Notes under the pieces: model-generated | Told to the model about the DNA's origin: nothing | The model's input: only the letters and a program-made list of their open reading frames with translations | Database searches by the model: none | Translations under genes and position numbers: made by a program | NCBI RefSeq assembly: GCF_000150275.1 | Contig: NW_002060943.1 | Location: 3,678,008-3,742,007 of the forward strand | Direction: 5' to 3' | Source: Trichoplax adhaerens | Lineage: Eukaryota; Animalia; Placozoa | DNA: 64,000 bases | Shown: piece by piece, positions 36,441 to 52,750 of the stretch | Layout: every line of letters starts with the position of its first letter | Numbering within the stretch: the first letter of the stretch is position 1

Positions 36441-39341
36441 TTAAAAGTAAGTTGTTAGTCCTTCATTTTTTATTTTTTCTGTAGATAATTCATACGTTCG
36501 ATAAGTGGTACCATACATGTTAGGCAGTGTTGCAAAATCTCCATGATCGGTTACTAGACGATCAATTTAGGATCCACGATTAGTTATTAGAATCAGAGAC
36601 ATGAGAAATTATGCGAAGGTGATCAATATATTCATTGAAGAAAAAGCTTACCTGAAAATTGTCGAGGTCGACTAACATCATGAACTTGTGATTGTTGGAC
36701 TTGTTTAAGATCATGATTTTCATACGTTGAATACGTTGGTTTTAAACCACTAAAGGAAAAAATTCAATAAATTAAGTAAAATTATCTATTCTTATTGCTA
36801 AAAGAATATAACACTAAATAATTTAAATTAATGTAGCTGTAAAGGATGTAATGGTCATAAAATTGAGCAACTCTATTCTCATAACACGGTAATATCTACA
36901 TTTAGAATTACCTGTTTGGTACAAAATTTGCAGATTTTGGAGTTCGAATCTCCTTAATTTTAGAAAAATAGGGATTTCTATTTGTTAAAGGTCCGGTTGG
37001 AGTTGGTAATTTAGGTAGTACGCTGCAGGAGTGAATATTAGTTTATGTTCGTCAATGCTTAAAAAAACCAGTCCAAACGGAATAACTGACATAAAGTTTA
37101 TCCTTGCATATAGATTAGCTAAAAGGAAAATTATCTCAAGAAAATTTGCTTAACTGATAGGTAGATTTATTCGAAAATAGCAAGTTAAATATTATTATGG
37201 AAACGTCATATTATAGAGCTGTAATTTATTTTCTAGATCTAGTATTCAATTGATAGGCAAATGGGCTTACTTCTGCTTTGGACCAAATCCGCGAACTTTC
37301 GGAAAATTTTCGCATGCCCAATAGGTAGCAATATCATTTTTTGCATAAGGCGCAATTTTCTCCTGGGTATGATGTTCAAAGCTCAACTGTGACTGGGTTG
37401 CATATGGATCAAAATATTTTTCTACATTACTTTTTCGGACGGACTCTTTAATGTAGATTGGCTTCAGCTTTCCGTCATTAAACTAAGTAAGAATCATTTA
37501 ATGATTAGGTAGGTGGTATAATCTTATTGAATAATATCACAACAAACACGATGGCCTTTCAATACTGCAATAGATTCGAATAGCGTATAAAATCGAAATT
37601 AGTCTTGTTGACACTACTTACTTGGTTTTGAAATCTAGAATGATGCTCATTTAAGATATGTGGCCGATTTGCACTTAAATTAATTTGGACATCTCTTTCT
37701 CCGTTGTAATTCGATTTCATTTCAGTATTTTGATTTCCTGTCGTTAGCTCTCGTCCTCTGGGAAGCGAATCGATCTACGCAAAGTAAATCATAGTATCAG
37801 AGATTGTTGGCAATTGCAGCTAATTAAGGCCACAAAGATAAGGAATTCTTGTCAATAGCAATATAAAGTTTCGTTTTGAATCACTTATATCTTTATCAAG
37901 CGACAATAAGTTAATGAAAATGCTAGAAATTGTAAGCAACATCTAAAATAGTTGTATCAAATTATTTCGTAATTTAGGCTTGAGATAATCTGGTAATCGC
38001 TTTAATTTTATGAAGTTTAGGATTAGGATATAATTCAGAGACTTACTTTTTCTATAACATTGCCAGTATATTGAACTTGGTAGAAAGGTTGCGGTTTGGT
38101 GTATCTCGAATTTTTAAACTGACTTGGGTTTTCATGATTATACAGTGTATCATTATTAGTTGTTGTATACATCTGTTTTGTCAGATTATATTTTCCTTCT
38201 CGTATTCCAAGAGGTATGGAATTTCTAGGAGCCTAAAAAAACAAAATGCCTTAGTAATAAATCTGATTGTGAAGCATTTGTACCATCAAAATTTAGCTAA
38301 TTAATATGCTTGTAATTCTAGTTAACAAGCAATTGCCCCGAAGTTGTTGTCAATGGTATAATAATAAATGCTCTAGAGAATGGACCGTAAACACACGTTA
38401 CTTCGCTAATTATTTATATCAATTTAGGATATTATTTTTAATTTCGAGCAAGCGAATTTAAACTGTCATGGTTACATTTGTTGAGAATTATATTATCCAA
38501 TTAATTCATAGTTCCCTTCCGAAGCCTAACTGATGTATGAAGACATTTGTCCATTAGTTTCAATAAATTTTGCGAATACCGTAGGCTAAATGTAATAAAG
38601 AATGATCCATTGATCAATAGGTGGAACTTTAATCATTTCATACTTAGTCATTTAAACGATACACTGATTTCTAACTTAAAGGGATCTACTCATCATTACG
38701 GATTTGAGCATGGAATTTAAAATCATGATTGTCGTCTAATTCATTACCTTTACCGCTAACTATAACAGAATTTTAGATAGAAAATCCAATTTTCCTAAAC
38801 ATTACAACAAATTATAGTATTTGACATCTTCATTTAAGCAACGCTAATAAGGTACGGAGTATAAAGTCCTTACAACTAGAAATTTTAATGGAAAGAGTAT
38901 AAGATTGGCCGCTATTTGTCGACAATTAGTTCCAGCATTAATAAAAATATTATAAGAAAGCTGCATCTGTATTTGAATTCATCTAATAGTAGAGCAATTA
39001 TAGCGTTTACTATCTTTATTCAAACAACCCCTAGTAAGGTACGGAGCATAAAGTCCTTAGAGTTAGAAATCTTAATGTAAAAAGTATTGGATTTGACTGC
39101 TATCTGTCGAAAATTAATTTGAACACAAATAATTTTATTCGAAAATTACATCTTTACCCCAATTCATCTATACCTAATGACAATATTATTCTCTAATTAT
39201 TCTCTCATATTAATTCGAGCAAAAAGTTAAACTTTAATTGGCATATACCTTAAAATTAGAGCTAGGAAATGGACCGTCGGGACCAGGGTTATATCCAATT
39301 CTAGTTGAAGTAGTTAATGTTGGCTGATTACTATCAATCAT
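36441..39341 (-). CDS. SAXO3: SAXO3-like ciliary/flagellar microtubule inner protein (multi-exon, not in ORF track)
   Basis: Phase-consistent open exons 38232-38047, 37774-37622, 37482-37271, 37022-36912, 36749-36652 and 36553-36441 (TAA), with GTAAGT/GTAAGC/GTAATT donors. Probable first coding exon 39341-39249 (MIDSNQ..RIGYNPGPDGPFPSSNFK); uncertain exons near 38759-38690 and 38585-38531. Motifs DPYATQSQLSF, YAKNDIATYWACENFPKVRGFG, VPNSG and LPNMYGTTYRTY resemble SAXO3 as I recall it (KDALTYW...PQVWGHG; VPKAYSTE). The gene model is solid; the name is tentative. Confidence 0.75.
38847..39170. repeat. Diverged intronic tandem duplication, period about 188 bp
   Basis: taaggtacggag.ataaagtcctta..a.tagaaat.ttaatg at about 38848 and 39035. 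Confidence 0.8.
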
Positions 39342-39624
39342 TTTGTAGGCTTTATCTAATGTTGTCGATTGTGCTGATGAATTCGATTTATATTGTACAT
39401 AAAATTCTATTTCAAATTAAGATCGAATGTTTCTTGCACTGGAACTGATCCTATTAATTTATAAAGTAGCGAATAAAAAAGGAACCGAATCGATGATTTA
39501 AAAATGATTTGAGCGATAATTGTAACTATTGCTCTATAAGAAAATAAATGGAGAAGTAGGTTATGAATATGGATACATAATGAGAATCTAACCTCCTCGA
39601 TGTCCGTAGAATTTTAATAACCAG

Positions 39625-39784
39625 GTTGCTATGGTGATAAGAAAGCGTGATCAGTTGTGATGGTAACCTCCTGCTAGCAACTTATCATGCATGATAGAGT
39701 ATCTCGATTCCAACAAATAAAATTATCATGACAATAAAGCCGTTAAATGGCTCTAGTGATTGGTCGATAGAATACCGTTATTGG
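39625..39784. promoter_or_regulatory. Candidate bidirectional ciliary promoter: RFX X-box-like motifs plus two inverted CCAAT boxes
   Basis: GTTGCTATGGTGAT 39625-39638, GTTGTGATGGTAAC 39654-39667, half-site TAGCAAC 39675-39681, and ATTGG at 39759 and 39780. Lies between the divergent SAXO3-like (ATG 39341) and KIF6-like (ATG 40299) genes. Confidence 0.6.
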
Positions 39785-40298
39785 CTATCCAAATGAAATA
39801 CGCAAAGTCAAACTGAATATGAATTACTCTAGTCTATCTCAATCTAGACACTTACCCTATTATGCTATTAGTCTGTAAGGAGAGTAGCAAATAAAATCAG
39901 AATAGTAACTTGTTCAGTATGATATTGTAAGGCATGATTGATACGTTATTTATCTTCATACTAGATAATTTCAAGTTTATAAAGTGAATAGTAAAAGTGG
40001 ACAAGTGATCTAACGATAGGTGAATAATATTATACTGGTAGTAGAGTTGATGGATTAATAAAATTTTATTCATATCGTTATATCTCGTAACATAATATTG
40101 CTAGAATAAGATCATCATTTATTACTTTTTCTGCTCAAATTGCTCTCAATGATTGTTCCGGCTAAAGTCAAGAAAATTAGCGTCATTGACTGAACGTAAT
40201 TAAAAGAATTAACGTGTTGCAGTTACTTATTATTAATCCTTCAATATCTTTACCAATTTACCATTTTAATCCTATAACCCATCTTAAAATGTTGATCC

Positions 40299-43200
40299 AT
40301 GGGTCACATTAAAACATTCTTAAGAGTTAAACCGAGTAAAAATCCTTGTAAATACTTTGTCGCATCAGATCAGTCTATACGAGTTAGTTTACCCGAATCA
40401 TTTTTCTCCAATAAGTTTAATAAAAGTCAACATCAACGGATCATAAGTCATGAATTTCTTTACGATGGCGTTTTTGGACCTGATGCCTTACAAGATCAAA
40501 TTTTTGAAGCAGTGGCTATGCCTGTAGTGGACAGATTTCTTCAAGGCTATAACGGTACAATATTTGCATATGGTCAAACTGGTTCCGGTAAAACTCATAC
40601 CATCGATGGTAGCCAAAAATATTTTCAAGATAGAGGCATAATACCTCGTATCCTATCAGCAATTTATGGTAACATCAAGCAAATAGATAGCAAAGATATC
40701 TCTATCCACGTTACTTATATGGAGATATATAAGGAAGTAGGATATGATTTGCTCAATCCTGCAACAAAAGCTGGCTCTATGATTATTGAGTTGCCAAGGG
40801 TATGCTAAGAAATTATTATTTCGATTCAGTTTTAGTTTAGAAATATAAGTGCGAATATGGAAATAAATTTTAAGCTAATCTTTCTATTTTAGAACTATTT
40901 TCAAGCAAAATCTATTATGTTTTATAGCTATATATCCCTTCTAGTATCTTATTTTACACTTAATAGTTATTTCGTTAACTTCAATACATAACTACTGGAA
41001 GAGTATATGCAGACGTCTTATTTCATCGAAAGATTTTAGGCCATGTTCTGTAAGCGTTACTATCTGAAGTATAGTAAATAATGGCTAGATTTTTGCATTA
41101 GTATAGGCTAAGTTTGCTAACAAGCACAAGAAAGTATCACACGTTTCACAATTTGCTGTACTTGAAGTAATTTTAATCACTTTGAGTGACCGTTTATTAT
41201 AATTTATCGATTGGTCTTTTACTAGATATGTTCATATCGACTATAAGAAATTATCTAAATTTCAGAAGATTAAGCATAGCACATACAATACTACTTTATC
41301 AACCAGATTGCTGCAATCGACTATTTAAAATATCGAATCGTGACTTTATACTTAGTACAATAATTTATCATTTCTTAGTCTTCAGAGCTGTGTTCTCAAC
41401 GCAGATAATTTAGGCTACAGAATTACATTACTCTATTTTATTCTTCAGCCATAATATTATTTAGCAGAAATATTACGAAAATATGATTAGTATGCGCCAA
41501 TATTTTGATGATACTGCTATAGAATACCAATTTAGTTACTACGAGTTAAATGATAGTTACCTAATTAAAGTTATAATTTATCCTTCTTATATAGACTTAA
41601 GTTTCGCCAGTAAAAGAATTATATGAGCAATTTCATGACATTAATTACCATGGAACTTTGTTAGAACCTTGTGGAAAATAATTTTAGATCAATATTCAAC
41701 TGTATCGATAGCTTCTACATACTGTTTACCTAACAGTCCAAAATTTGGTCTACATAATTCACTGTTTCTTCAATGTTCACAGCTAGTGATTAGCAAATAT
41801 ATAGCTATATTTTAGGCTACTAGTACATGTTAGCTTTTAACATTTTACTCTTGTAACCTTACACCCTCGCGTGATAGTACTTCAAAATTATTCTTTATAT
41901 ATTTCGTTAAGACTGCAACCCACTAATTGTCCCGGCATTAATCAGTATATGTATCCATTTTGAACAGAGTTTTACCATGGTATTATCTTATTTAATCTTT
42001 ATTAACTTCCAGTTTATTTTTCTCATTTCCGGCTAGGTTCAAATATTAGATGGTGGAAGAGAAGGTGCACTTATCCGTAACTTATCTTCTCACTTAGCTT
42101 CAAACGAAAGAATTGCTCAAGATCTGATGTTCCAAGGCAGAGCTAATAAAAAAATTGCCGAAACGCCTATGAATCATAATTCATCTCGATCCCATACAAT
42201 ATTTACCATTATACAAACTACAACATCTCAGGATACCCCGACAATTACAAGGTCAGTAATTCTTGAGAAAGAAAATTGAATCTTTATTGAGTCCTAAGTA
42301 AAATACTTTTGTATTTAAGTATATTAATTAATACTAATGAAAGTAATGTAAGAAAATAACTTTGTTCTTTCGCTGATCGTTAAATTCATAGTTTAATTAT
42401 TATAGGAAATAAAATATCAAAATCAGATTAGTAATGTCTGCTTCATAAATCCTCTTTCGCTTTACGTTTTTAAATTAATGCCTTTACCTTCTTTCTGTTA
42501 GCTTATACTAATTGCTCCTATATACTACAGTAGTATTGAAAAATTGTAAACTAATCATCTTTAGTATAAATTTTTTATTTATAGCTGTAGATACTTTTGA
42601 CCTTAGAGTGATAGATTTGATGATAAAAGGTGTAGAATATTTTACAATAAAAGTATAGATAGCATTGTGCCGTGAGTACTAAGAGAGAAGTGGATTTTAT
42701 ATTTGAAACTTCTAAGGCTTGTTAATATAGATACATACAAATTAGGATCTTCTGTACTGGTACTTATAACAAATGGTAATGATTATGCTCGTTTTATAGA
42801 TTGAAATATCTTGTCTATAACTTTTTTCTCCTAGATCTAAACTTCATATTGTTGATTTGGCGGGGTCTGAAAGAGTTTCCAAATCAGGGCTATCGGGCAA
42901 ACATTTAGAAGAGGCTAAATTAATCAATCTTTCTCTATATTATCTTGAGCAAGTCATTATAGCACTACAAGAAGATATAAACTATGCAAGTAGACCCAAC
43001 ACCACATTAACTAATTCAAAAAAGAATCGTTGGTAAGATAAATAAATATACCTCATCTAAATTAAGGAATTTTTAAGTTTGACTTTATATCTACTAAGAT
43101 TGCCGATATTATCGAAATAACTCTATTTTCATGATTAAATGTTATTCTAGGCAAAGATCTAATAGCGCTAATACAGTCCGTTCTGGTAGTAGCTCAGTTA

Positions 43201-46200
43201 ACATATCTAAACATGTGCCTTATCGAAATTCTCTCTTGACTATGCTCTTGAAAGACAGCATAGGTGCTATAGAGTTTACATGACTACTACAATGATACAT
43301 ATTTGATTCCAATTTTAGAGTATCCTAATCTGTATACTTTGCAATTTATAAGGTGGTAATTGTTTAACATCCATGGTTGCTACCATATCAAGTGATATGC
43401 ATAATTTAATGGAAACTATGTCGACTTTTCGATTTTCACAACGTGTTGCTTGCATCGAAAATTATGCGAGGTAAAGACATTAGCTCTGATTTATCTCATT
43501 CATTGAGGAATAATGTAGACTACTGCTGTATAATTGGGCTTGTATTGAATATTATTTTAATCGAACGGTTGTTAATTGTAATGAATTAATACTGGTAGCT
43601 AAAGTACTTATAAATGGTGGATAATAATTTACAGAATATTCACTGAAGTAGTATTTACTCACTTCATTTTAATGAATTGCACCCTGATATTATATGACGA
43701 GGTAAAGAATTTCAGCTCTGTTTCCTTCCATTCCTTGACGAGTAATATAGTCTATTACCATAAAATGGGGCTACATATTGAACATTGCACGAATCGAACG
43801 GTTGTTGACTGTAATAAATTAGTTTCGATAGAAAGCGTTCTTCCAATCGATGCATAATAATTTACTCCGAATTCATAAAAGTAGTATTTATTTACTCCAT
43901 CTTATTGAAGTTATAATTACTTTTGCTGTACTGTATACTAAATGTCGCCAGTACTACATCCTAGATTTAATAGGTAGAGAATAGCATTCGTCCTGCGGAT
44001 AAGCGAAAGAGCTAGAAAGATAGAGTTTTATTCGCTTCGAACCGATACATAATTTACTTGACGGTCGTCAAAGTAGTATACACTTCATTTTATTAGAGTT
44101 ATAATTTCTTTTATTGTATGGTGGATGTTAGTAGTATTGTATCCTAGCTTTGACACGTAAACGATGGCGTTAGCCCTATAGATATGTATAAGAGCTAGAA
44201 AGATAGTTTTATTAGCATAAATTAAACACGAATTTCTTATATACCGCTATGTTGTTAAGATTTCATGTTTTGTAAAGTGATTAGTTATTACAAATGCATT
44301 TACGAGAAAATTTTAGTAATTTTAAGGGATGTTATTATAATTTTAGATAAAAATTGTTCATGAAAAGGCATTTCTTACTTGTTAATAATATAGACGAAAT
44401 AAAGAATTAAACGATAAAACTATTATTAAGAAACTAAAGGAGAGAATAGTTCAACTTGAAGCTCACTTAATTTCTGGTGAAAGTGAGGTAATGTAATTTA
44501 TGTTTTTCGTTTTACAATAATTGATCCATAGTATTAAACAGAAAATTAACATAACTAACTTTTATTTATAGCCATTGACGAGGTATTTTATGTATTAATT
44601 CTTATTATTAAATGATGATATTACCTAGAATGAACAAAAATTAGGAAATTCTAGTCGTAAGCTTGATCTAGTGGATAAAAGAGATTGTGCAGAAATCGTT
44701 CACGCTTTTATAGCCGGAAAAGTAAACGATCCAATTAAAGCAGGTAGAACCCTTTAATAACGCAAGTTTTAACACAGTATCTTGTAAAGTAGGATTTAAT
44801 GCCTGGTTTGTATCTTAATTAAATTTAAATTTTGGTATCTTCTAGGTGTAAATAGTATCGAAATGTTTAGAGAATGCTTCGTGATTTTTCGGGCTATTAT
44901 TACTCAGAACAACATCAACCCTGAAGGATTCGAAAGGACAGGACAATCGAATGGTAATTTTCATTTAGTTATTGCAAGATTTCGCGAAAGAAAGAGTTTT
45001 AATATAATTAATATTGTACGATGAACGAATTTCATTCTATTTCTCAGTTTTCTACTTGTATATAATCACTAGATTCCATTTGGTCACGGGAGAATGATCG
45101 CAAAAGGAATAAATCGACTCCATCGAGTAAATTTGTTACTATGAACGATAACCGACAATCTTATGATATAGACAATGATGATCAACAGCTTCGTTATCAT
45201 TATTTAGCCCATCAGAGCAATACTAGTAGTCCAAGTAAATTAGCAAATAGTCCGGTTAAACAAATCTATAATAGCAAATATCAGGGGTTTAACCGATCCG
45301 ATAATTTATTGAAATCACCATCCAAAAAGTATAAAAGAAGTAAAACTTCAACCAATTCCATGTCGTCATCGACCAAGTCTACTCCTGCAGTAAATAAAAG
45401 TGCTACCTTTATAACCAAAGAAGAGAGTAAAGTAAAACATCGAAAAAGCAAATCGACTTCTAATATCGCAATATCATCATTAACAAACGAGTCTAAAGAT
45501 AGGAAACTACCTGCTTCTCAAGGTCGTCAAGGAATGTTAAATCAGTCAAGGTACTTTTTGATAAAGTAGTGGATGGATTTCTACGGCTATAGAACATTAG
45601 TAATACACGCGTGTAATAGTTAGCACTGCATCATAGAAGATATTCATTGTAGATTTCATTTTCTATCATAATTTAGCTCTCAATATGATCCCCCAAATTC
45701 CATGAATAACGTAGAAAATGAAGGTTTATTACAACAGAAACGGTTATTTCGAGATGATGAAATTGGTCCAGTAATTCAAGAATTAACATTCATACAACAG
45801 GAATTGAGGTTGGTTGCTCTAACAATATTTTCTGCCGCTTGTAATAGAAAATAAATTTCATTATTCTAAAGTAGAGTATATCCTAAACTTCTTCTATCGT
45901 ATTGATCGTCGTGTTTGAATGGTCATGATAGACGAAATGCCTTAACACTTGAAGACCAGCTAGCAGAACAACATGCTGAAATATTAAGATTAAAGCGTCG
46001 TAATGTCAACAACGAAATTATTGCTCGAGAGAAATTAGTGGAGAAGCAAATAAAAAATAAACTGGTAAATAAAGGATCTATTATTTGAGCCATCAAAGCA
46101 AACGCAGAGTTGAAGTTATTTGTAGTCTCTATGCCATTTTATTAATATTATTCGATGATAGGGTAGTGAAGCACGATTTAAATATATCTTGGATTTTATA

Positions 46201-47724
46201 AATGATTTTACTAGGATCGCACCGAAGTTCGACTTTCTCAGGTATCGCAGCAGCTAAAGCAACTTCTTGTAAATAAAAGTTCTCATGATGATCCTGATTA
46301 TCGAACTCCAACCTCACATGGAACGATAATTTCACCAGAGTCTAGTATGAAACAGTATGGAATCTCTGTAAGACTACAGAATCCAAATAAAGCTAAGGAT
46401 CAATTAGCAGCACAAGCAAACAAAACACCAACATCAACGGAAGAAAGTTCAAGATATTCCCATGAAATGGTAAATAATTTCTTCTTAAATCAATTTAAGC
46501 TAGGATAGACCATGCTTCATTTTTTGCGTATTAAACATAATTTTATTCTCTTTCTAACGGATAGAAATTAAATTCAACGGAGACATTGAATGGAGATGAA
46601 AATCAACAAAAGTTAATAGCTAAGGAGGAATCAACCAGGCAAAAATTGTTAGCTTTTAAAGCTCAGTTACGTGATAATCGAAAAAATTCAACTAGCCGAA
46701 GTACATCAGCGCCTCGCGAATTTACTAAACAGTATGATATGAATACGAGTAGTGGCGTTCAATCGGCTCCAGGAAGTAGTTGGAATACGGATGTTGAAAA
46801 TAAGGCTGCATCGGATTCATTTTCCAAAGTTTTTACTATGCCAACCTATGGCCCAGCAGCTTTCGCTATGGATCCTACTAATAGTATCAAAACTCAGTCT
46901 TCTAATGCAAGTACATCCATTATGACCAACACTAGCAATGCCACAAGTAGCCCAGATTATGTCACGCCGACAAAGCCGATGGAATCCATGAAGGTACATA
47001 GATACACCAATGATATTCATCGTTATTATGACTATCTAGGACTAAAATATTGCATACCATATAGAGAAAAAAGAATTTAGGTTTTCTTTGATCTTATGGT
47101 GTACCATAAGAGAGAAATAGATGAAGCAGCAAGATATAAATGTTAATGTTATTTTTCAATATTAAATCTTAGCAACAACCGACGAAACCAACCTATGGAA
47201 AACGTGGTTATAATCCTAAAAGTGTATTTAGTATCTCCAATACCCTATCGGAATATCCTTCCACTCCAGAAAATGAAACGATAACATCACCTAATGTGGG
47301 CCTTCATCATCATAAAGCAGTTAATGAAAATCATTCCTTGGCAGAGTCTAGCTACCAGACTACTTCATCCAGCCAGATAGTCATGGACAGAAGGCAAAAA
47401 ATTGACACATCAACTGGCAAGCAAGAACAAACATCTCCAGTAGGCATTAATATTAGTCCAAAAATGTTTAAGAAATCAACGCCTTCGCATGCTAATATAC
47501 CTAAAAAGTCAATAATAGGCCCTGAAAAATTTACTGTACAAAGTATTAGTAATGATGTCATTGCTGATACAGAACGAGAAAATTCTTATTCGTCTGCAGT
47601 ACGAAAGCAAAAAGACCGAATTGCCAAGATTCGAGCTGCCATGAAGGCTGCAACGGTTATACAACGAGCTTGGAGGAGTTACAAACTTCGTCGTGGTAGA
47701 AAATTGCCTACTAAGCGAATATAA
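40299..47724 (+). CDS. KIF6: Kinesin-9 family (KIF6-like) motor with long low-complexity tail and C-terminal IQ motif, 14 exons, about 1146 aa
   Basis: Exons 40299-40799, 42037-42251, 42835-43032, 43151-43263, 43353-43470, 44394-44487, 44629-44743, 44846-44953, 45073-45550, 45677-45808, 45932-46064, 46215-46469, 46565-46993, 47173-47724. The total of 3441 nt is in frame. P-loop [17 protein letters not shown], switch [13 protein letters not shown], switch [24 protein letters not shown] and [17 protein letters not shown] are KIF6-like. Confidence 0.88.
43555..44215. repeat. Diverged intronic tandem duplications in kinesin intron 5
   Basis: aatcgaacggttgtt..tgtaat.aatta at about 43559 and 43792. 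ataatttac...aagtagtat...gttataatt and aagagctagaaagatag are repeated at about 43857/44049 and 44008/44190. Confidence 0.7.
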
Positions 47725-50926: not shown

Positions 50927-52750
50927 AGTTAGAACAAGAAATGCTGTGGCAAATCCGCGGGGAATTTATAACTGTTGAAAGTATGGATTTTACACGTAGG
51001 TAATCAAGTCAACAAGAAATGCTGTGGCCAATCTGCAGGGAATTTAATACCGTTGAAAGAATGGATTTTATACGTAGGTAATCAAAGCAACAAGAAGTGC
51101 AAGATCACATCTGTAGGGAATTTATTAGTGTTGAAAGTATGGATTTTACACTTAGGCAATCAAGGCAGCAAGAAATGCTCAGGCAAATCTGCAGGGAATT
51201 TGTTACTGTTGAAAGCATGGATTTTACTTGTAGGTAATCAGAGCAAGAAGAAATGCTCTGGCAAACCTGCAGGGGCTTTGTTACTGAATCAAAGCACCAA
51301 GAAATGCTCTAGCAAATCTGCAGGGAATTTGTTACTGTTGAAAGTAGGGATTTTACACGTAGGTAATCAGAGCAACAAGAAATGCTCTGGCAAATCTGCA
51401 GGGACTTTGTTACTGAATTAAAGCACCAAGAAATGCTCTAGCAAATCTGCAGGGAATTTGTTACTGTTGAAAGTAGGGATTTTACACGTAGGTAATCAGG
51501 GCCACAAGAAATGCTCTGGTATATCTGCAGGGAATTTGTTACTGTTGAAAGCATGGATTTTACACGTAGGTAATCAGAGCAAGAAGAAATGCTCTGGCAA
51601 ATTTGCAGGGACTTTGTTACTGAATTAAAGCACCAAGAAATGCTCTAGCCAATCTGCAGGGAATTTGTTACTGTTGAAAGTAGGGATTTTACATGTAGGT
51701 AATCAGAGCAACAAGAAATGCTGTGGCCAATCTGTAGGGAATTTGTTACTGTTGAAAGTATGGATTTTACATGTAGGTAATCAGAGCAACAAGAAATGCT
51801 CTGGCAAATCTGTAGGGAATTTGTTACTGTTGAAAGCATAGATTTCACACGTAGGTAATCAGAGCAACAAGAAATGCTGTGGCCAATCTGCAGGGAATTT
51901 GTTACTGTTGAAAGTATGGATTTTACACGTCGGTAATCAAAGCAACAAGAAGTGCAAGATCACATCTGTAGGGAATTTGTTACTGTTGAAAGTATGGATT
52001 TTACATGTCGGTAATCAGAGCAAGAAGAAGTGCAAGATCACATCTGTAGGGAATTTGTTACTGTTGAAAGTATGGATTTTACATGTAGGTAATCAGAGCA
52101 AGAAGAAGTGCAATGGCCAATCTGCAGGGAATTTGTTACTGTTGAAAGTATAAATTTTACATGTAGGTAATCAGAGCAAGAAGAAGTGCAATGGCCAATC
52201 TGCAGGGAATTTGTTACTGTTGAAAGTATAAATTTTACATGTAGGTAATCAGAGCAAGAAGAAGTGCAATGGCCAATCTGCAGGGAATTTGTTACTGTTG
52301 AAAGTATAAATTTTACATGTAGGTAATCAGAGCAAGAAGAAGTGCAATGGCCAATCTGCAGGGAATTTGTTACTGTTGAAAGTATAAATTTTACATGTAG
52401 GTAATCAGAGCAAGAAGAAGTGCAATGGCCAATCTGCAGGGAATTTGTTACTGTTGAAAGTATAAATTTTACATGTAGGTAATCAGAGTAAGAAGAAGTG
52501 CAATGGCCAATCTGCAGGGAATTTGTTACTGTTGAAAGTATAAATTTTACATGTAGGTAATCAGAGTAAGAAGAAGTGCAATGGCCAATCTGCAGGGAAT
52601 TTGTTACTGTTGAAAGTATAAATTTTACATGTAGGTAATCAGAGCAAGAAGAAGTGCAATGGCCAATCTGCAGGGAATTTGTTACTGTTGAAAGTATAAA
52701 ATTTACATGTAAGTAATCAAAGCAAGAAGAAGTGCAATGGCCAATCTGCA
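50927..52750. repeat. 78-bp tandem satellite, about 24 units including three 51-bp deletion variants
   Basis: Unit gcaagaagaagtgcaatggccaatctgcagggaatttgttactgttgaaagtataaattttacatgtaggtaatcaga, period 78 (e.g. 52111 to 52189). Short units ttactgaat.aaagcacc at 51281, 51410 and 51617. Confidence 0.97.

What the first reader, a model, noticed from the sequence alone, without database searches (positions are those of the whole stretch)
36441..47724. Head-to-head ciliary gene pair (SAXO3-like MIP and KIF6-like kinesin) sharing an X-box-rich promoter
Seen: a multi-exon minus-strand gene and the plus-strand kinesin start about 960 bp apart. Two X-box-like 14-mers (GTTGCTATGGTGAT, GTTGTGATGGTAAC), a TAGCAAC half-site and two ATTGG boxes cluster within 160 bp between them. 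Established: RFX factors bind GTNRCC-N(0-3)-RGYAAC and drive ciliary genes; kinesin-9 motors and SAXO proteins are motile-cilium components. Inference: a compact co-regulated motile-cilia module with a bidirectional RFX/NF-Y promoter in an early-branching animal.
Basis: partly seen in the sequence, partly recalled or inferred. Interest (0 to 1): 0.8.

Follow-up and report, generated by a model that had tools for sequence, protein, structure and literature searches.

The report
Conserved X-box module between two cilia-type genes
In this placozoan-sized genome, a SAXO3-type ciliary microtubule protein gene and a kinesin-9-like motor gene sit head to head, and the only conserved non-coding DNA between them is a 77-110 bp block with two RFX-type X-box sites; this is an expected but well-supported case of RFX-style control of a cilia gene.

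Summary
The two start codons lie at 39341 (-) and 40299 (+), 958 bp apart.

A second placozoan lineage (Logan contig L001) gives the key evidence. Silent sites there are saturated (53% of four-fold sites differ). The only non-coding DNA that still aligns across about 4.7 kb is window 39592-39668 (63/77 identical), which holds both X-boxes. Site B is identical in both lineages and lies 313 bp from the minus-strand ATG in both.

The minus gene is a 7-exon, 322-codon SAXO3 orthologue. Exons 4 and 3 match sea-urchin SAXO3 (8SNB) collinearly.

The kinesin is not KIF6; a better KIF6 orthologue lies on another contig. It belongs to an uncharacterised long-tailed kinesin-9-like clade that shares a C-terminal IQ region.

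The NF-Y boxes are neither enriched nor conserved. Shared (bidirectional) use of the promoter is untested. The gene pairing was not found in five other animals.

This is a new member of a known kind, of moderate interest. The scan flagged X-box promoters at two other places in this genome; I did not test those.

The parts
39592..39668 (.). Conserved non-coding block. It is the core of a conservation peak spanning about 39577-39686 and is the only alignable non-coding DNA between the two placozoan lineages.
   Evidence: blastn gives L001:2291-2367 = window 39592-39668, 82% identity. Alignment A1. In a sliding identity profile, background is about 40% and the peak reaches 85%. 63/77 bases are identical against 47% expected at neutral sites, binomial 4e-10. 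The block is single copy in the genome, has no Rfam hit and no consistent RNA fold.
39625..39638 (.). X-box-like site A: GTTGCTATGGTGAT, which reads ATCACCATAGCAAC on the minus strand. One perfect half-site (AGCAAC) plus a weak half.
   Evidence: 1 mismatch to GTNRCC-NN-RGYAAC on the minus strand. In L001 the same position reads GTTGCTATAGTAAC, a perfect GTHNYYATRRNAAC match.
39654..39667 (.). X-box-like site B: GTTGTGATGGTAAC. Perfect half-site GGTAAC/GTTACC plus an imperfect half.
   Evidence: Identical in L001 and L003 together with its flanks. 1 mismatch to GTHNYYATRRNAAC. Its first base is 313 bp from the A of the minus-strand ATG in both species.
39676..39682 (+). Third RFX half-site (TAGCAAC).
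   Evidence: Present. L001 has a half-site within 1 bp of the matching position but in the opposite orientation (GTTACT at 2376).
39759..39784 (-). Two ATTGG (CCAAT on the minus strand) pentamers, at 39759-39763 and 39780-39784.
   Evidence: Present, but CCAAT/ATTGG occurs 2.6 times per kb in the window. L001 has none in this orientation or position.
36441..39341 (-). SAXO3-like gene, 7 exons, 322 codons. E1 39341-39246, E2 38232-38047, E3 37774-37622, E4 37482-37271, E5 37022-36912, E6 36749-36652, E7 36553-36444, stop 36443-36441.
   Evidence: GT-AG boundaries and consistent phases read from the sequence. Exon-4 profile against the PDB: only SAXO3 (8snb_7M), E 5.7e-6, chain residues 171-219. 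Exon-3 profile: the same chain, E 0.065, residues 103-145. Exons 2-5 are conserved at 51-76% aa in L001.
40299..47724 (+). Long-tailed kinesin-9-like gene. Exon 1 is 40299-40799. Further motor exons lie around 42037-42261, 42833-42979, 43206-43268 and 43319-43468. Tail exons run to 47721, stop 47722-47724. The IQ motif is in the last exon.
   Evidence: Pfam Kinesin matches on the exon pieces. Pfam IQ PF00612 scores 23.4 bits. Collinear tblastn with 1086-1426-aa relatives includes the C-terminus at 47557-47700, 54% identical to Ptychodera P0123. Tree.

Best explanation
The 958-bp spacer between a SAXO3 orthologue (minus strand) and a long-tailed kinesin-9-like gene (plus strand) contains one selectively constrained cis-regulatory module of 77-110 bp. 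Its core is two X-box-type 14-mers 29 bp apart plus a third half-site. Each 14-mer has one perfect RFX half-site, an AT spacer and a weaker second half. The most likely mechanism is that RFX winged-helix factors, whose DNA-binding-domain genes are in this genome, bind these sites and switch on the SAXO3-like gene in ciliated cells. That gene's ATG lies 284-341 bp away, within the range seen for other X-boxes in this genome. The module may also feed the kinesin gene 632-674 bp away, because it is the only conserved non-coding element in the whole region, but that is an inference. Shown here: the anatomy, the conservation, the gene identities and the presence of RFX genes. Inferred: RFX occupancy, cell-type specificity, the direction or directions of action, and a ciliary role for the kinesin.
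For: Conservation. L001 (relative, 85% nt and 92% aa identity in kinesin exon 1) aligns to the window only at exons and at 39592-39668. The profile over the 955-bp spacer shows a single peak. Four-fold sites differ at 53% (JC 0.9), so neutral DNA is saturated. The block is 63/77 identical (binomial 4e-10), and its differences fall evenly across codon phases, so it is not coding. Motif content. Both X-box-like sites of each species' spacer lie inside the block. Site B is identical, and site A is a perfect C. elegans-type X-box in the relative. From the window's density of such sites (24 positions in 59 kb), two in a 90-bp block has P of about 7e-4. The block-to-ATG(-) distance is identical (251 bp) in both species. 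RFX_DNA_binding (PF02257) matches at least 4 loci in the genome. Calibration within placozoans. The bona fide MIP gene RIB43A has GTTGCCATGGAAAT at -200 in this genome and GTTACCATGGAATT at -273 in a relative. A perfect X-box about 520 bp upstream of an EF-hand gene has a counterpart, GTTGCTATGGCGAT, at -413 in a relative. The perfect palindrome GTTRCCATGGYAAC occurs 6 times against 1 for the reversed control. Literature. X-boxes lie 100-250 bp upstream of C. elegans ciliary genes, often more than one per gene (PMC2873420; PMC3245922). Saxo2 and Kif6 are among mouse RFX targets (PMC7498320). SAXO3 is an A-tubule MIP (PMC11834534, PMC13066092).
Against: There are no expression, TSS or binding data. 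By the strict mammalian consensus, site A has 1 mismatch and site B has 2, and such sites are not rare one by one. Genome-wide enrichment of the palindrome with up to 1 mismatch is only 124 against 68. In a panel of six Trichoplax ciliary genes, only RIB43A had a proximal X-box by consensus scan; CFAP20, IFT20 and the KIF6 orthologue had none within 1 kb of the ATG, DNALI1 (start codon not located) none in the 1 kb scanned, and IFT57 one at -962. The conserved block also includes non-X-box sequence (for example AAAGCGTGA between the sites), so other factors may bind. Only one other lineage was available for the footprint.
Confidence: 0.6

Rival explanations
1. One reading: a truly bidirectional RFX plus NF-Y promoter that co-regulates both genes as one compact motile-cilia module.
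For: The genes are head to head with 958 bp between ATGs. The arrangement and spacings are kept in a second placozoan lineage (934 bp). The X-box block is the only conserved non-coding element in about 4.7 kb, so if the kinesin has a conserved upstream element, it is this one. The kinesin is nearest to kinesin-9 motors, which are flagellar. Kif6 is an RFX target in mouse.
Against: The CCAAT boxes are at background density and are not conserved. The block is 632-674 bp from the kinesin ATG. Orthologous long-tailed kinesins in Ptychodera, Lytechinus, Branchiostoma and Pinctada have no SAXO3 neighbour within 10 kb upstream and no X-box-like site within 2 kb of the gene start. The kinesin is not KIF6, and its ciliary role is inferred only.
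Confidence: 0.22
2. The conserved block is a regulatory element, or core promoter/5'-UTR, bound by factors other than RFX, and its resemblance to the X-box is coincidental.
For: Conservation extends beyond the 14-mers (39592-39624 and the AAAGCGTGA spacer). Neither window site is a perfect consensus match. The loose consensus GTHNYYATRRNAAC with up to 1 mismatch occurs about 0.4 times per kb in this AT-rich DNA. The small gene panel shows no general X-box enrichment.
Against: Two X-box-like sites inside a block that was chosen blind by BLAST has P of about 7e-4. The best-conserved stretches are the X-box halves themselves. In the relative, site A is a perfect X-box. A third half-site is kept in place despite a flipped orientation. 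X-box-like elements are likewise kept upstream of RIB43A and an EF-hand gene in relatives.
Confidence: 0.15
3. The block is a chance motif cluster with no function, or a hidden exon or small RNA gene.
For: 13% of simulated 59-kb sequences contain one cluster of three half-sites. Open frames cross the block on the minus strand in both species.
Against: The block is conserved at 82% against a saturated neutral background. Its differences are spread evenly over codon phases. There is no Rfam match. RNA folding z-scores are -1.85, 0.03, -0.68 and +1.64, with different folds in the two species. The block is single copy in the genome.
Confidence: 0.03

Closest known systems
X-box promoter motifs of RFX/DAF-19 target ciliary genes (C. 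elegans, Drosophila, mammals)
   Same: Imperfect palindromes of two RGYAAC-type halves with a short spacer, a few hundred bp upstream of a ciliary structural gene. More than one site per promoter, kept across species. RFX genes are present in the genome.
   Different: Here each site has only one perfect half. The sites lie about 284-341 bp from the nearest ATG rather than 100-250 bp. The organism is a placozoan, for which no binding or expression data were available to me. My small panel did not show X-boxes to be general among this genome's ciliary genes.
SAXO3, A-tubule microtubule inner protein of sea-urchin sperm doublets (PDB 8SNB chain 7M, 322 aa)
   Same: Two exons match it collinearly (chain residues 103-145 and 171-219). 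It is the only significant PDB hit (E 5.7e-6). The predicted length is the same, 322 residues.
   Different: The other five exons give no detectable match. No Pfam family was hit. Localisation is untested. The protein evolves fast (51-76% identity between the two placozoan lineages, against 92% for the kinesin exon).
Kinesin-9 family (KIF9/KLP1 and KIF6)
   Same: It has a kinesin motor with an N-terminal extension aligned from residue 1. The nearest named relatives are 'KIF6/9'. A clade member's best solved matches are Chlamydomonas KLP1 and KIF9.
   Different: It is not the KIF6 orthologue: 40-42% identity to KIF6s that are 59-79% identical to each other, while a better KIF6 gene lies on contig C1394. 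It belongs to a separate clade of 1086-1426-aa proteins with a long low-complexity tail and a conserved C-terminal IQ region. No member has a characterised function.
Bidirectional (divergent) promoters of co-functioning gene pairs
   Same: The genes are head to head, less than 1 kb apart, with one conserved element between them. The arrangement is kept in a second placozoan lineage.
   Different: There is no evidence of shared TSS region or co-expression. The element is off-centre, 2.2 times closer to one gene. The pairing is absent from the other phyla examined.

Membership tests
RFX X-box cis-element | Match to GTNRCC-N(0-3)-RGYAAC or GTHNYY-AT-RRNAAC | tested here: inconclusive
   Site A (minus strand) has 1 mismatch to the first consensus. 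Site B has 2 mismatches to the first and 1 to the second. In the relative, site A matches the second consensus perfectly. Each site has one perfect half.
RFX X-box cis-element | Lies a few hundred bp upstream of a ciliary gene start | tested here: met
   The sites are 284-341 bp upstream of the SAXO3-like ATG. Other X-boxes in this genome lie 200-520 bp upstream of ATGs.
RFX X-box cis-element | Evolutionary conservation above neutral background | tested here: met
   It is the only conserved non-coding block, 63/77 identical against 47% neutral identity.
RFX X-box cis-element | An RFX factor is encoded by the organism | tested here: met
   PF02257 scores above cut-off at 5 places (at least 4 loci) in the genome.
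RFX X-box cis-element | RFX binding and RFX-dependent expression | not testable with these tools
   Needs EMSA or DAP-seq, ChIP, or reporter or knock-down work.
SAXO3 (microtubule inner protein) | Sequence similarity to the structurally defined SAXO3 chain | tested here: met
   Exon-4 profile: E 5.7e-6, the only hit. Exon-3 profile: E 0.065, the same chain, collinear. Exons 2, 5 and 7 gave no hit; exons 1 and 6 were not searched.
SAXO3 (microtubule inner protein) | Comparable length and architecture | tested here: met
   The 7-exon model has 322 codons against 322 aa in sea urchin (PMC11834534).
SAXO3 (microtubule inner protein) | Location in the A-tubule lumen (protofilaments A12-A13) | not testable with these tools
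   Needs cryo-EM or localisation data.
KIF6 (kinesin-9B) orthologue | Best reciprocal relationship to KIF6 | tested here: not met
   Identity to KIF6s is 40-42%. A multi-exon gene on C1394 matches KIF6 at 45-100% per exon. In the tree, the window gene is separated from the KIF6 clade with support 100.
Kinesin-9 family, broad sense | Kinesin motor whose nearest characterised relatives are KIF9/KLP1/KIF6 | tested here: inconclusive
   Pfam Kinesin is met. Named hits are KIF6 or 'KIF6/9'. Clade member P0123's best PDB hits are KLP1 at 240 bits and KIF9 at 232 bits, against OSM-3 at 204 bits. For window exon 1 alone, a 'Kinesin-like protein' chain (7lff/7tqx; a fungal kinesin-8 by my recollection) scores slightly above KIF9.
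Bidirectional promoter | Divergent genes less than 1 kb apart | tested here: met
   ATG to ATG is 958 bp, and 934 bp in L001.
Bidirectional promoter | Shared regulatory region with correlated expression | not testable with these tools
   No transcript or expression data are held.
NF-Y CCAAT box | CCAAT enriched and conserved near the promoter | tested here: not met
   There are 3 pentamers in 955 bp against 2.5 expected. None is conserved in place or orientation in L001.

The most novel reading that the evidence does not exclude
The long-tailed, IQ-ended kinesin-9-like clade (placozoans, hemichordates, echinoderms, amphioxus, molluscs; none of the nearest full-length relatives I looked up was from a vertebrate, though absence was not tested) is an undescribed axonemal motor. 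In placozoans it is wired to the same RFX X-box module as the A-tubule inner protein SAXO3, so that a motor and a lumenal stabiliser of doublet microtubules are co-produced from one divergent promoter.
Probability: 0.2. Interest if true: 0.55.

Novelty: new member of a known kind. Interest (0 to 1): 0.38.

Why it matters
RFX control of ciliary genes is well established in nematodes, flies and vertebrates, and recent work reports it in choanoflagellates. A placozoan example is expected, but this one comes with a clean footprint: one 77-bp island of conservation in otherwise saturated DNA. That makes it a ready substrate for binding and reporter tests in an early-branching animal, and a seed for building a placozoan RFX matrix. 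The follow-up also corrects the gene labels. It shows that Trichoplax SAXO3 exists and was apparently missed by ORF-based annotation. It also shows that the neighbouring motor belongs to an uncharacterised, conserved kinesin clade, which may deserve study in its own right.

Tried and rejected
- Pfam on all seven minus-gene exon pieces gave nothing.
- PDB phmmer on exons 2, 5 and 7 gave nothing useful.
- ESM Atlas on exon 4 gave only sub-threshold leads to other MIP families (Piercer, CFAP68, SPMIP11) and was not used as evidence.
- The exact-protein look-up of the window's own kinesin exon 1 found nothing on record.
- Tektin (PF03148) could not be found exon by exon.
- The ciliary-gene panel (CFAP20, RIB43A, DNALI1, IFT20, IFT57, KIF6 orthologue) did not show general X-box enrichment: 2 consensus hits against about 2.5 expected for the loose consensus. 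The DNALI1 first exon was not located.
- A synteny search in Corticium, Lingula and Pinctada and in Ptychodera, Lytechinus and Branchiostoma found no SAXO3-like exon within 10 kb upstream.
- L027 (C1414:5.376 Mb) was considered as a possible KIF9 and rejected; it is kinesin-2-like.
- 'Kinesin-9C' is not a term in the searched literature.
- The coding-exon, repeat and RNA-gene readings of the block were rejected.
- The spliced proteins were never joined for any search, fold or look-up. All searches were exon by exon, by reference, so no full-length Pfam scan, structure prediction or full-length homologue search of either gene was done.
Full report
**Where we are.** The window is AT-rich (33% G+C). 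It lies at C1414:3678008-3742007 of a 105.6-Mb, 1414-contig assembly. From my own knowledge, that size fits Trichoplax adhaerens, and an earlier scan note also calls the genome Trichoplax. I saw nothing that I took for human, viral or toxin sequence.

**Observation.**
- Both 14-mers occur once each, at 39625-39638 and 39654-39667.
- TAGCAAC is at 39676-39682, and ATTGG at 39759 and 39780.
- The minus-strand gene begins at ATG 39341 and the kinesin at ATG 40299, 958 bp apart.
- The description is therefore accurate.

On sequence statistics alone the cluster is only mildly unusual.
- The loose C. elegans consensus GTHNYYATRRNAAC with up to 1 mismatch occurs at 24 positions in 59 kb.
One of those two is site A read on the minus strand, ATCACCATAGCAAC.
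- This is the only place in the window with three RFX half-sites within 60 bp. 13% of Markov simulations of 59 kb contain one such cluster.

**The decisive evidence is comparative.**
- Kinesin exon 1 (169 aa) has a 92%-identical counterpart, P0001, in Logan assemblies of three sequencing runs.
- Contig L001 (4709 bp) covers kinesin exons 1-2, the whole spacer, and exons 1-5 of the minus gene.
- blastn aligns L001 to the window only at exons and at one non-coding stretch: L001:2291-2367 = window 39592-39668, 82% identity.
- A global alignment of the 955-bp spacer shows about 40% background identity and a single peak of up to 85% at about 39577-39686.
- Four-fold degenerate sites of kinesin exon 1 differ at 53% (JC distance 0.9), so unconstrained DNA is saturated.
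- 63/77 identities in the block has a binomial tail of 4e-10. The 14 differences fall evenly on the three codon phases, so the block is not coding.
- The block is single copy in the genome, matches no Rfam family, and has no consistent RNA fold in the two species.

**Inside the block.**
- Site B is identical in both lineages, together with its flanks.
- Site A keeps its GTTGCT/AGCAAC half. In the relative it reads GTTGCTATAGTAAC, a perfect GTHNYYATRRNAAC.
- The centre-to-centre spacing of the two sites (29 bp) is kept.
- The distance from site B to the minus-strand ATG (313 bp) is kept exactly.
- The third half-site is kept within 1 bp but in flipped orientation.
- These two sites are the only X-box-like matches in either species' spacer.
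- Given the window's site density, two such sites in a blindly chosen 90-bp block has P of about 7e-4.
- The ATTGG/CCAAT boxes are at background frequency (2.6 per kb) and are not conserved.

**Is an RFX reading plausible in this organism?**
- RFX_DNA_binding (PF02257) matches above cut-off at five places, representing at least four loci.
- The perfect palindrome GTTRCCATGGYAAC occurs 6 times against 1 for the reversed control. With up to 1 mismatch the count is 124 against 68, a modest enrichment.
- One perfect site lies about 230 bp upstream of a p25-alpha+DCX gene.
- Another lies about 520 bp upstream of an EF-hand gene. A relative from metagenome assemblies has GTTGCTATGGCGAT, almost the same variant as site A here, at -413.
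- RIB43A, an undoubted inner-protein gene, has GTTGCCATGGAAAT at -200 plus two further half-sites in this genome, and GTTACCATGGAATT at -273 in a relative.
- Against this, my consensus scan found nothing within 1 kb of the start codons of CFAP20, IFT20 and the KIF6 orthologue, nothing in the 1 kb scanned for DNALI1 (whose start codon was not located), and only a distal site for IFT57. I cannot claim a general X-box rule for this genome.

**Gene identities: the minus gene.**
- It has seven GT-AG exons with consistent phases and 322 codons.
- Exon 4 hits sea-urchin SAXO3 (8snb_7M, 322 aa) at E 1.9e-4. A two-sequence profile with the relative's exon hits it at E 5.7e-6, and it is the only hit.
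- An exon-3 profile finds the same chain weakly (E 0.065) at collinear residues 103-145.
- SAXO3 is an A-tubule inner protein shared by sperm and other cilia (PMC11834534, PMC13066092).

**Gene identities: the kinesin.**
- It has a standard motor, and its named short relatives are 'KIF6' or 'KIF6/9'.
- It is only 40-42% identical to KIF6s, which are 59-79% identical among themselves from sponge to vertebrate.
- A multi-exon gene on C1394 matches KIF6 far better.
- An all-against-all HMMER search shows the nearest full-length relatives to be 1086-1426-aa 'uncharacterized' or 'kinesin heavy chain-like' proteins of Ptychodera, Saccoglossus, Lytechinus, Antedon, Branchiostoma and several molluscs.
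- A tree puts the window gene with them (the enclosing clade has support 100; its link to the animal long-tailed set has support 81), apart from the KIF6 clade.
- They share tail segments and the extreme C-terminus with the window gene: 47557-47700, 54% identity. That region carries a Pfam IQ motif.
- The clade's best solved relatives are KLP1 and KIF9, by a moderate margin over kinesin-2.
- So 'kinesin-9-like' is fair, 'KIF6-like' is not, and a ciliary role is only inferred.

**Is the pairing old?**
- It is kept in the second placozoan lineage (934 bp between ATGs).
- I found no SAXO3-like exon within 10 kb upstream of KIF6 in a sponge or a brachiopod.
- I also found none upstream of the long-tailed kinesin in a bivalve, a hemichordate, a sea urchin or an amphioxus. 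Those four kinesin genes have no X-box-like site within 2 kb upstream of the annotated start.

**Verdict.**
- The element is real and constrained. It most likely acts as an RFX-type module for the SAXO3-like gene. Sharing with the kinesin is possible but unproven.
- The NF-Y part should be dropped, and the kinesin should be relabelled.
- This is an expected kind of regulation (RFX and cilia genes are linked in animals and in choanoflagellates; PMC10530576). It is therefore a new member of a known kind, of moderate interest, with a useful side result on an uncharacterised kinesin clade.

Noticed in passing
G000:C1394:~560800-563500 (L026:4826-7503): This multi-exon kinesin matches KIF6 of Lingula, Corticium and Mixophyes collinearly at 45-100% per exon. 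It is the likely true KIF6 orthologue of this genome. No X-box-like site was found within 1 kb upstream of its ATG.
   Followed up: partly
window 44395-47724 and proteins P0123-P0136: The kinesin's long tail is not placozoan-specific. Tail segments and the C-terminal IQ region are shared with 1086-1426-aa uncharacterised kinesins of hemichordates, echinoderms, amphioxus and molluscs. This is an unnamed conserved clade next to kinesin-9.
   Followed up: partly
window 51078-51933: A satellite with a 78-bp period carries GTAATCARAGCAAC in each unit. These units give six false X-box hits at 1 mismatch, so any motif scan of this genome should mask the satellite.
   Followed up: no
window 38820-38900 and 39030-39110: Two similar copies of about 80 bp (AAGGTACGGAG.ATAAAGTCCTTA...) lie about 210 bp apart inside intron 1 of the SAXO3-like gene. 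I saw them by eye.
   Followed up: no
G000:C1414:3916856-3920235: One of the genome's RFX DNA-binding-domain genes lies about 175 kb downstream of this window on the same contig.
   Followed up: no
G000:C1410:2415640-2415780 (L029:1240-1380): The RIB43A promoter has an X-box-like site (GTTGCCATGGAAAT, -200), an AGCAAC half-site, and a GTTGCC half-site overlapping a CCAAT box, all within about 90 bp. A relative keeps GTTACCATGGAATT at -273 (L039:2268).
   Followed up: partly
G000:C1412:8202349 (L008:1501): A perfect X-box lies about 230 bp upstream of a minus-strand gene encoding p25-alpha plus doublecortin domains (apicortin-like architecture).
   Followed up: partly
window 39341-39592 versus L001:2040-2291: The distance from the conserved block to the SAXO3-like ATG is exactly 251 bp in both lineages, although the intervening DNA is only about 40-45% identical. 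This may reflect a spacing constraint or may be chance.
   Followed up: no
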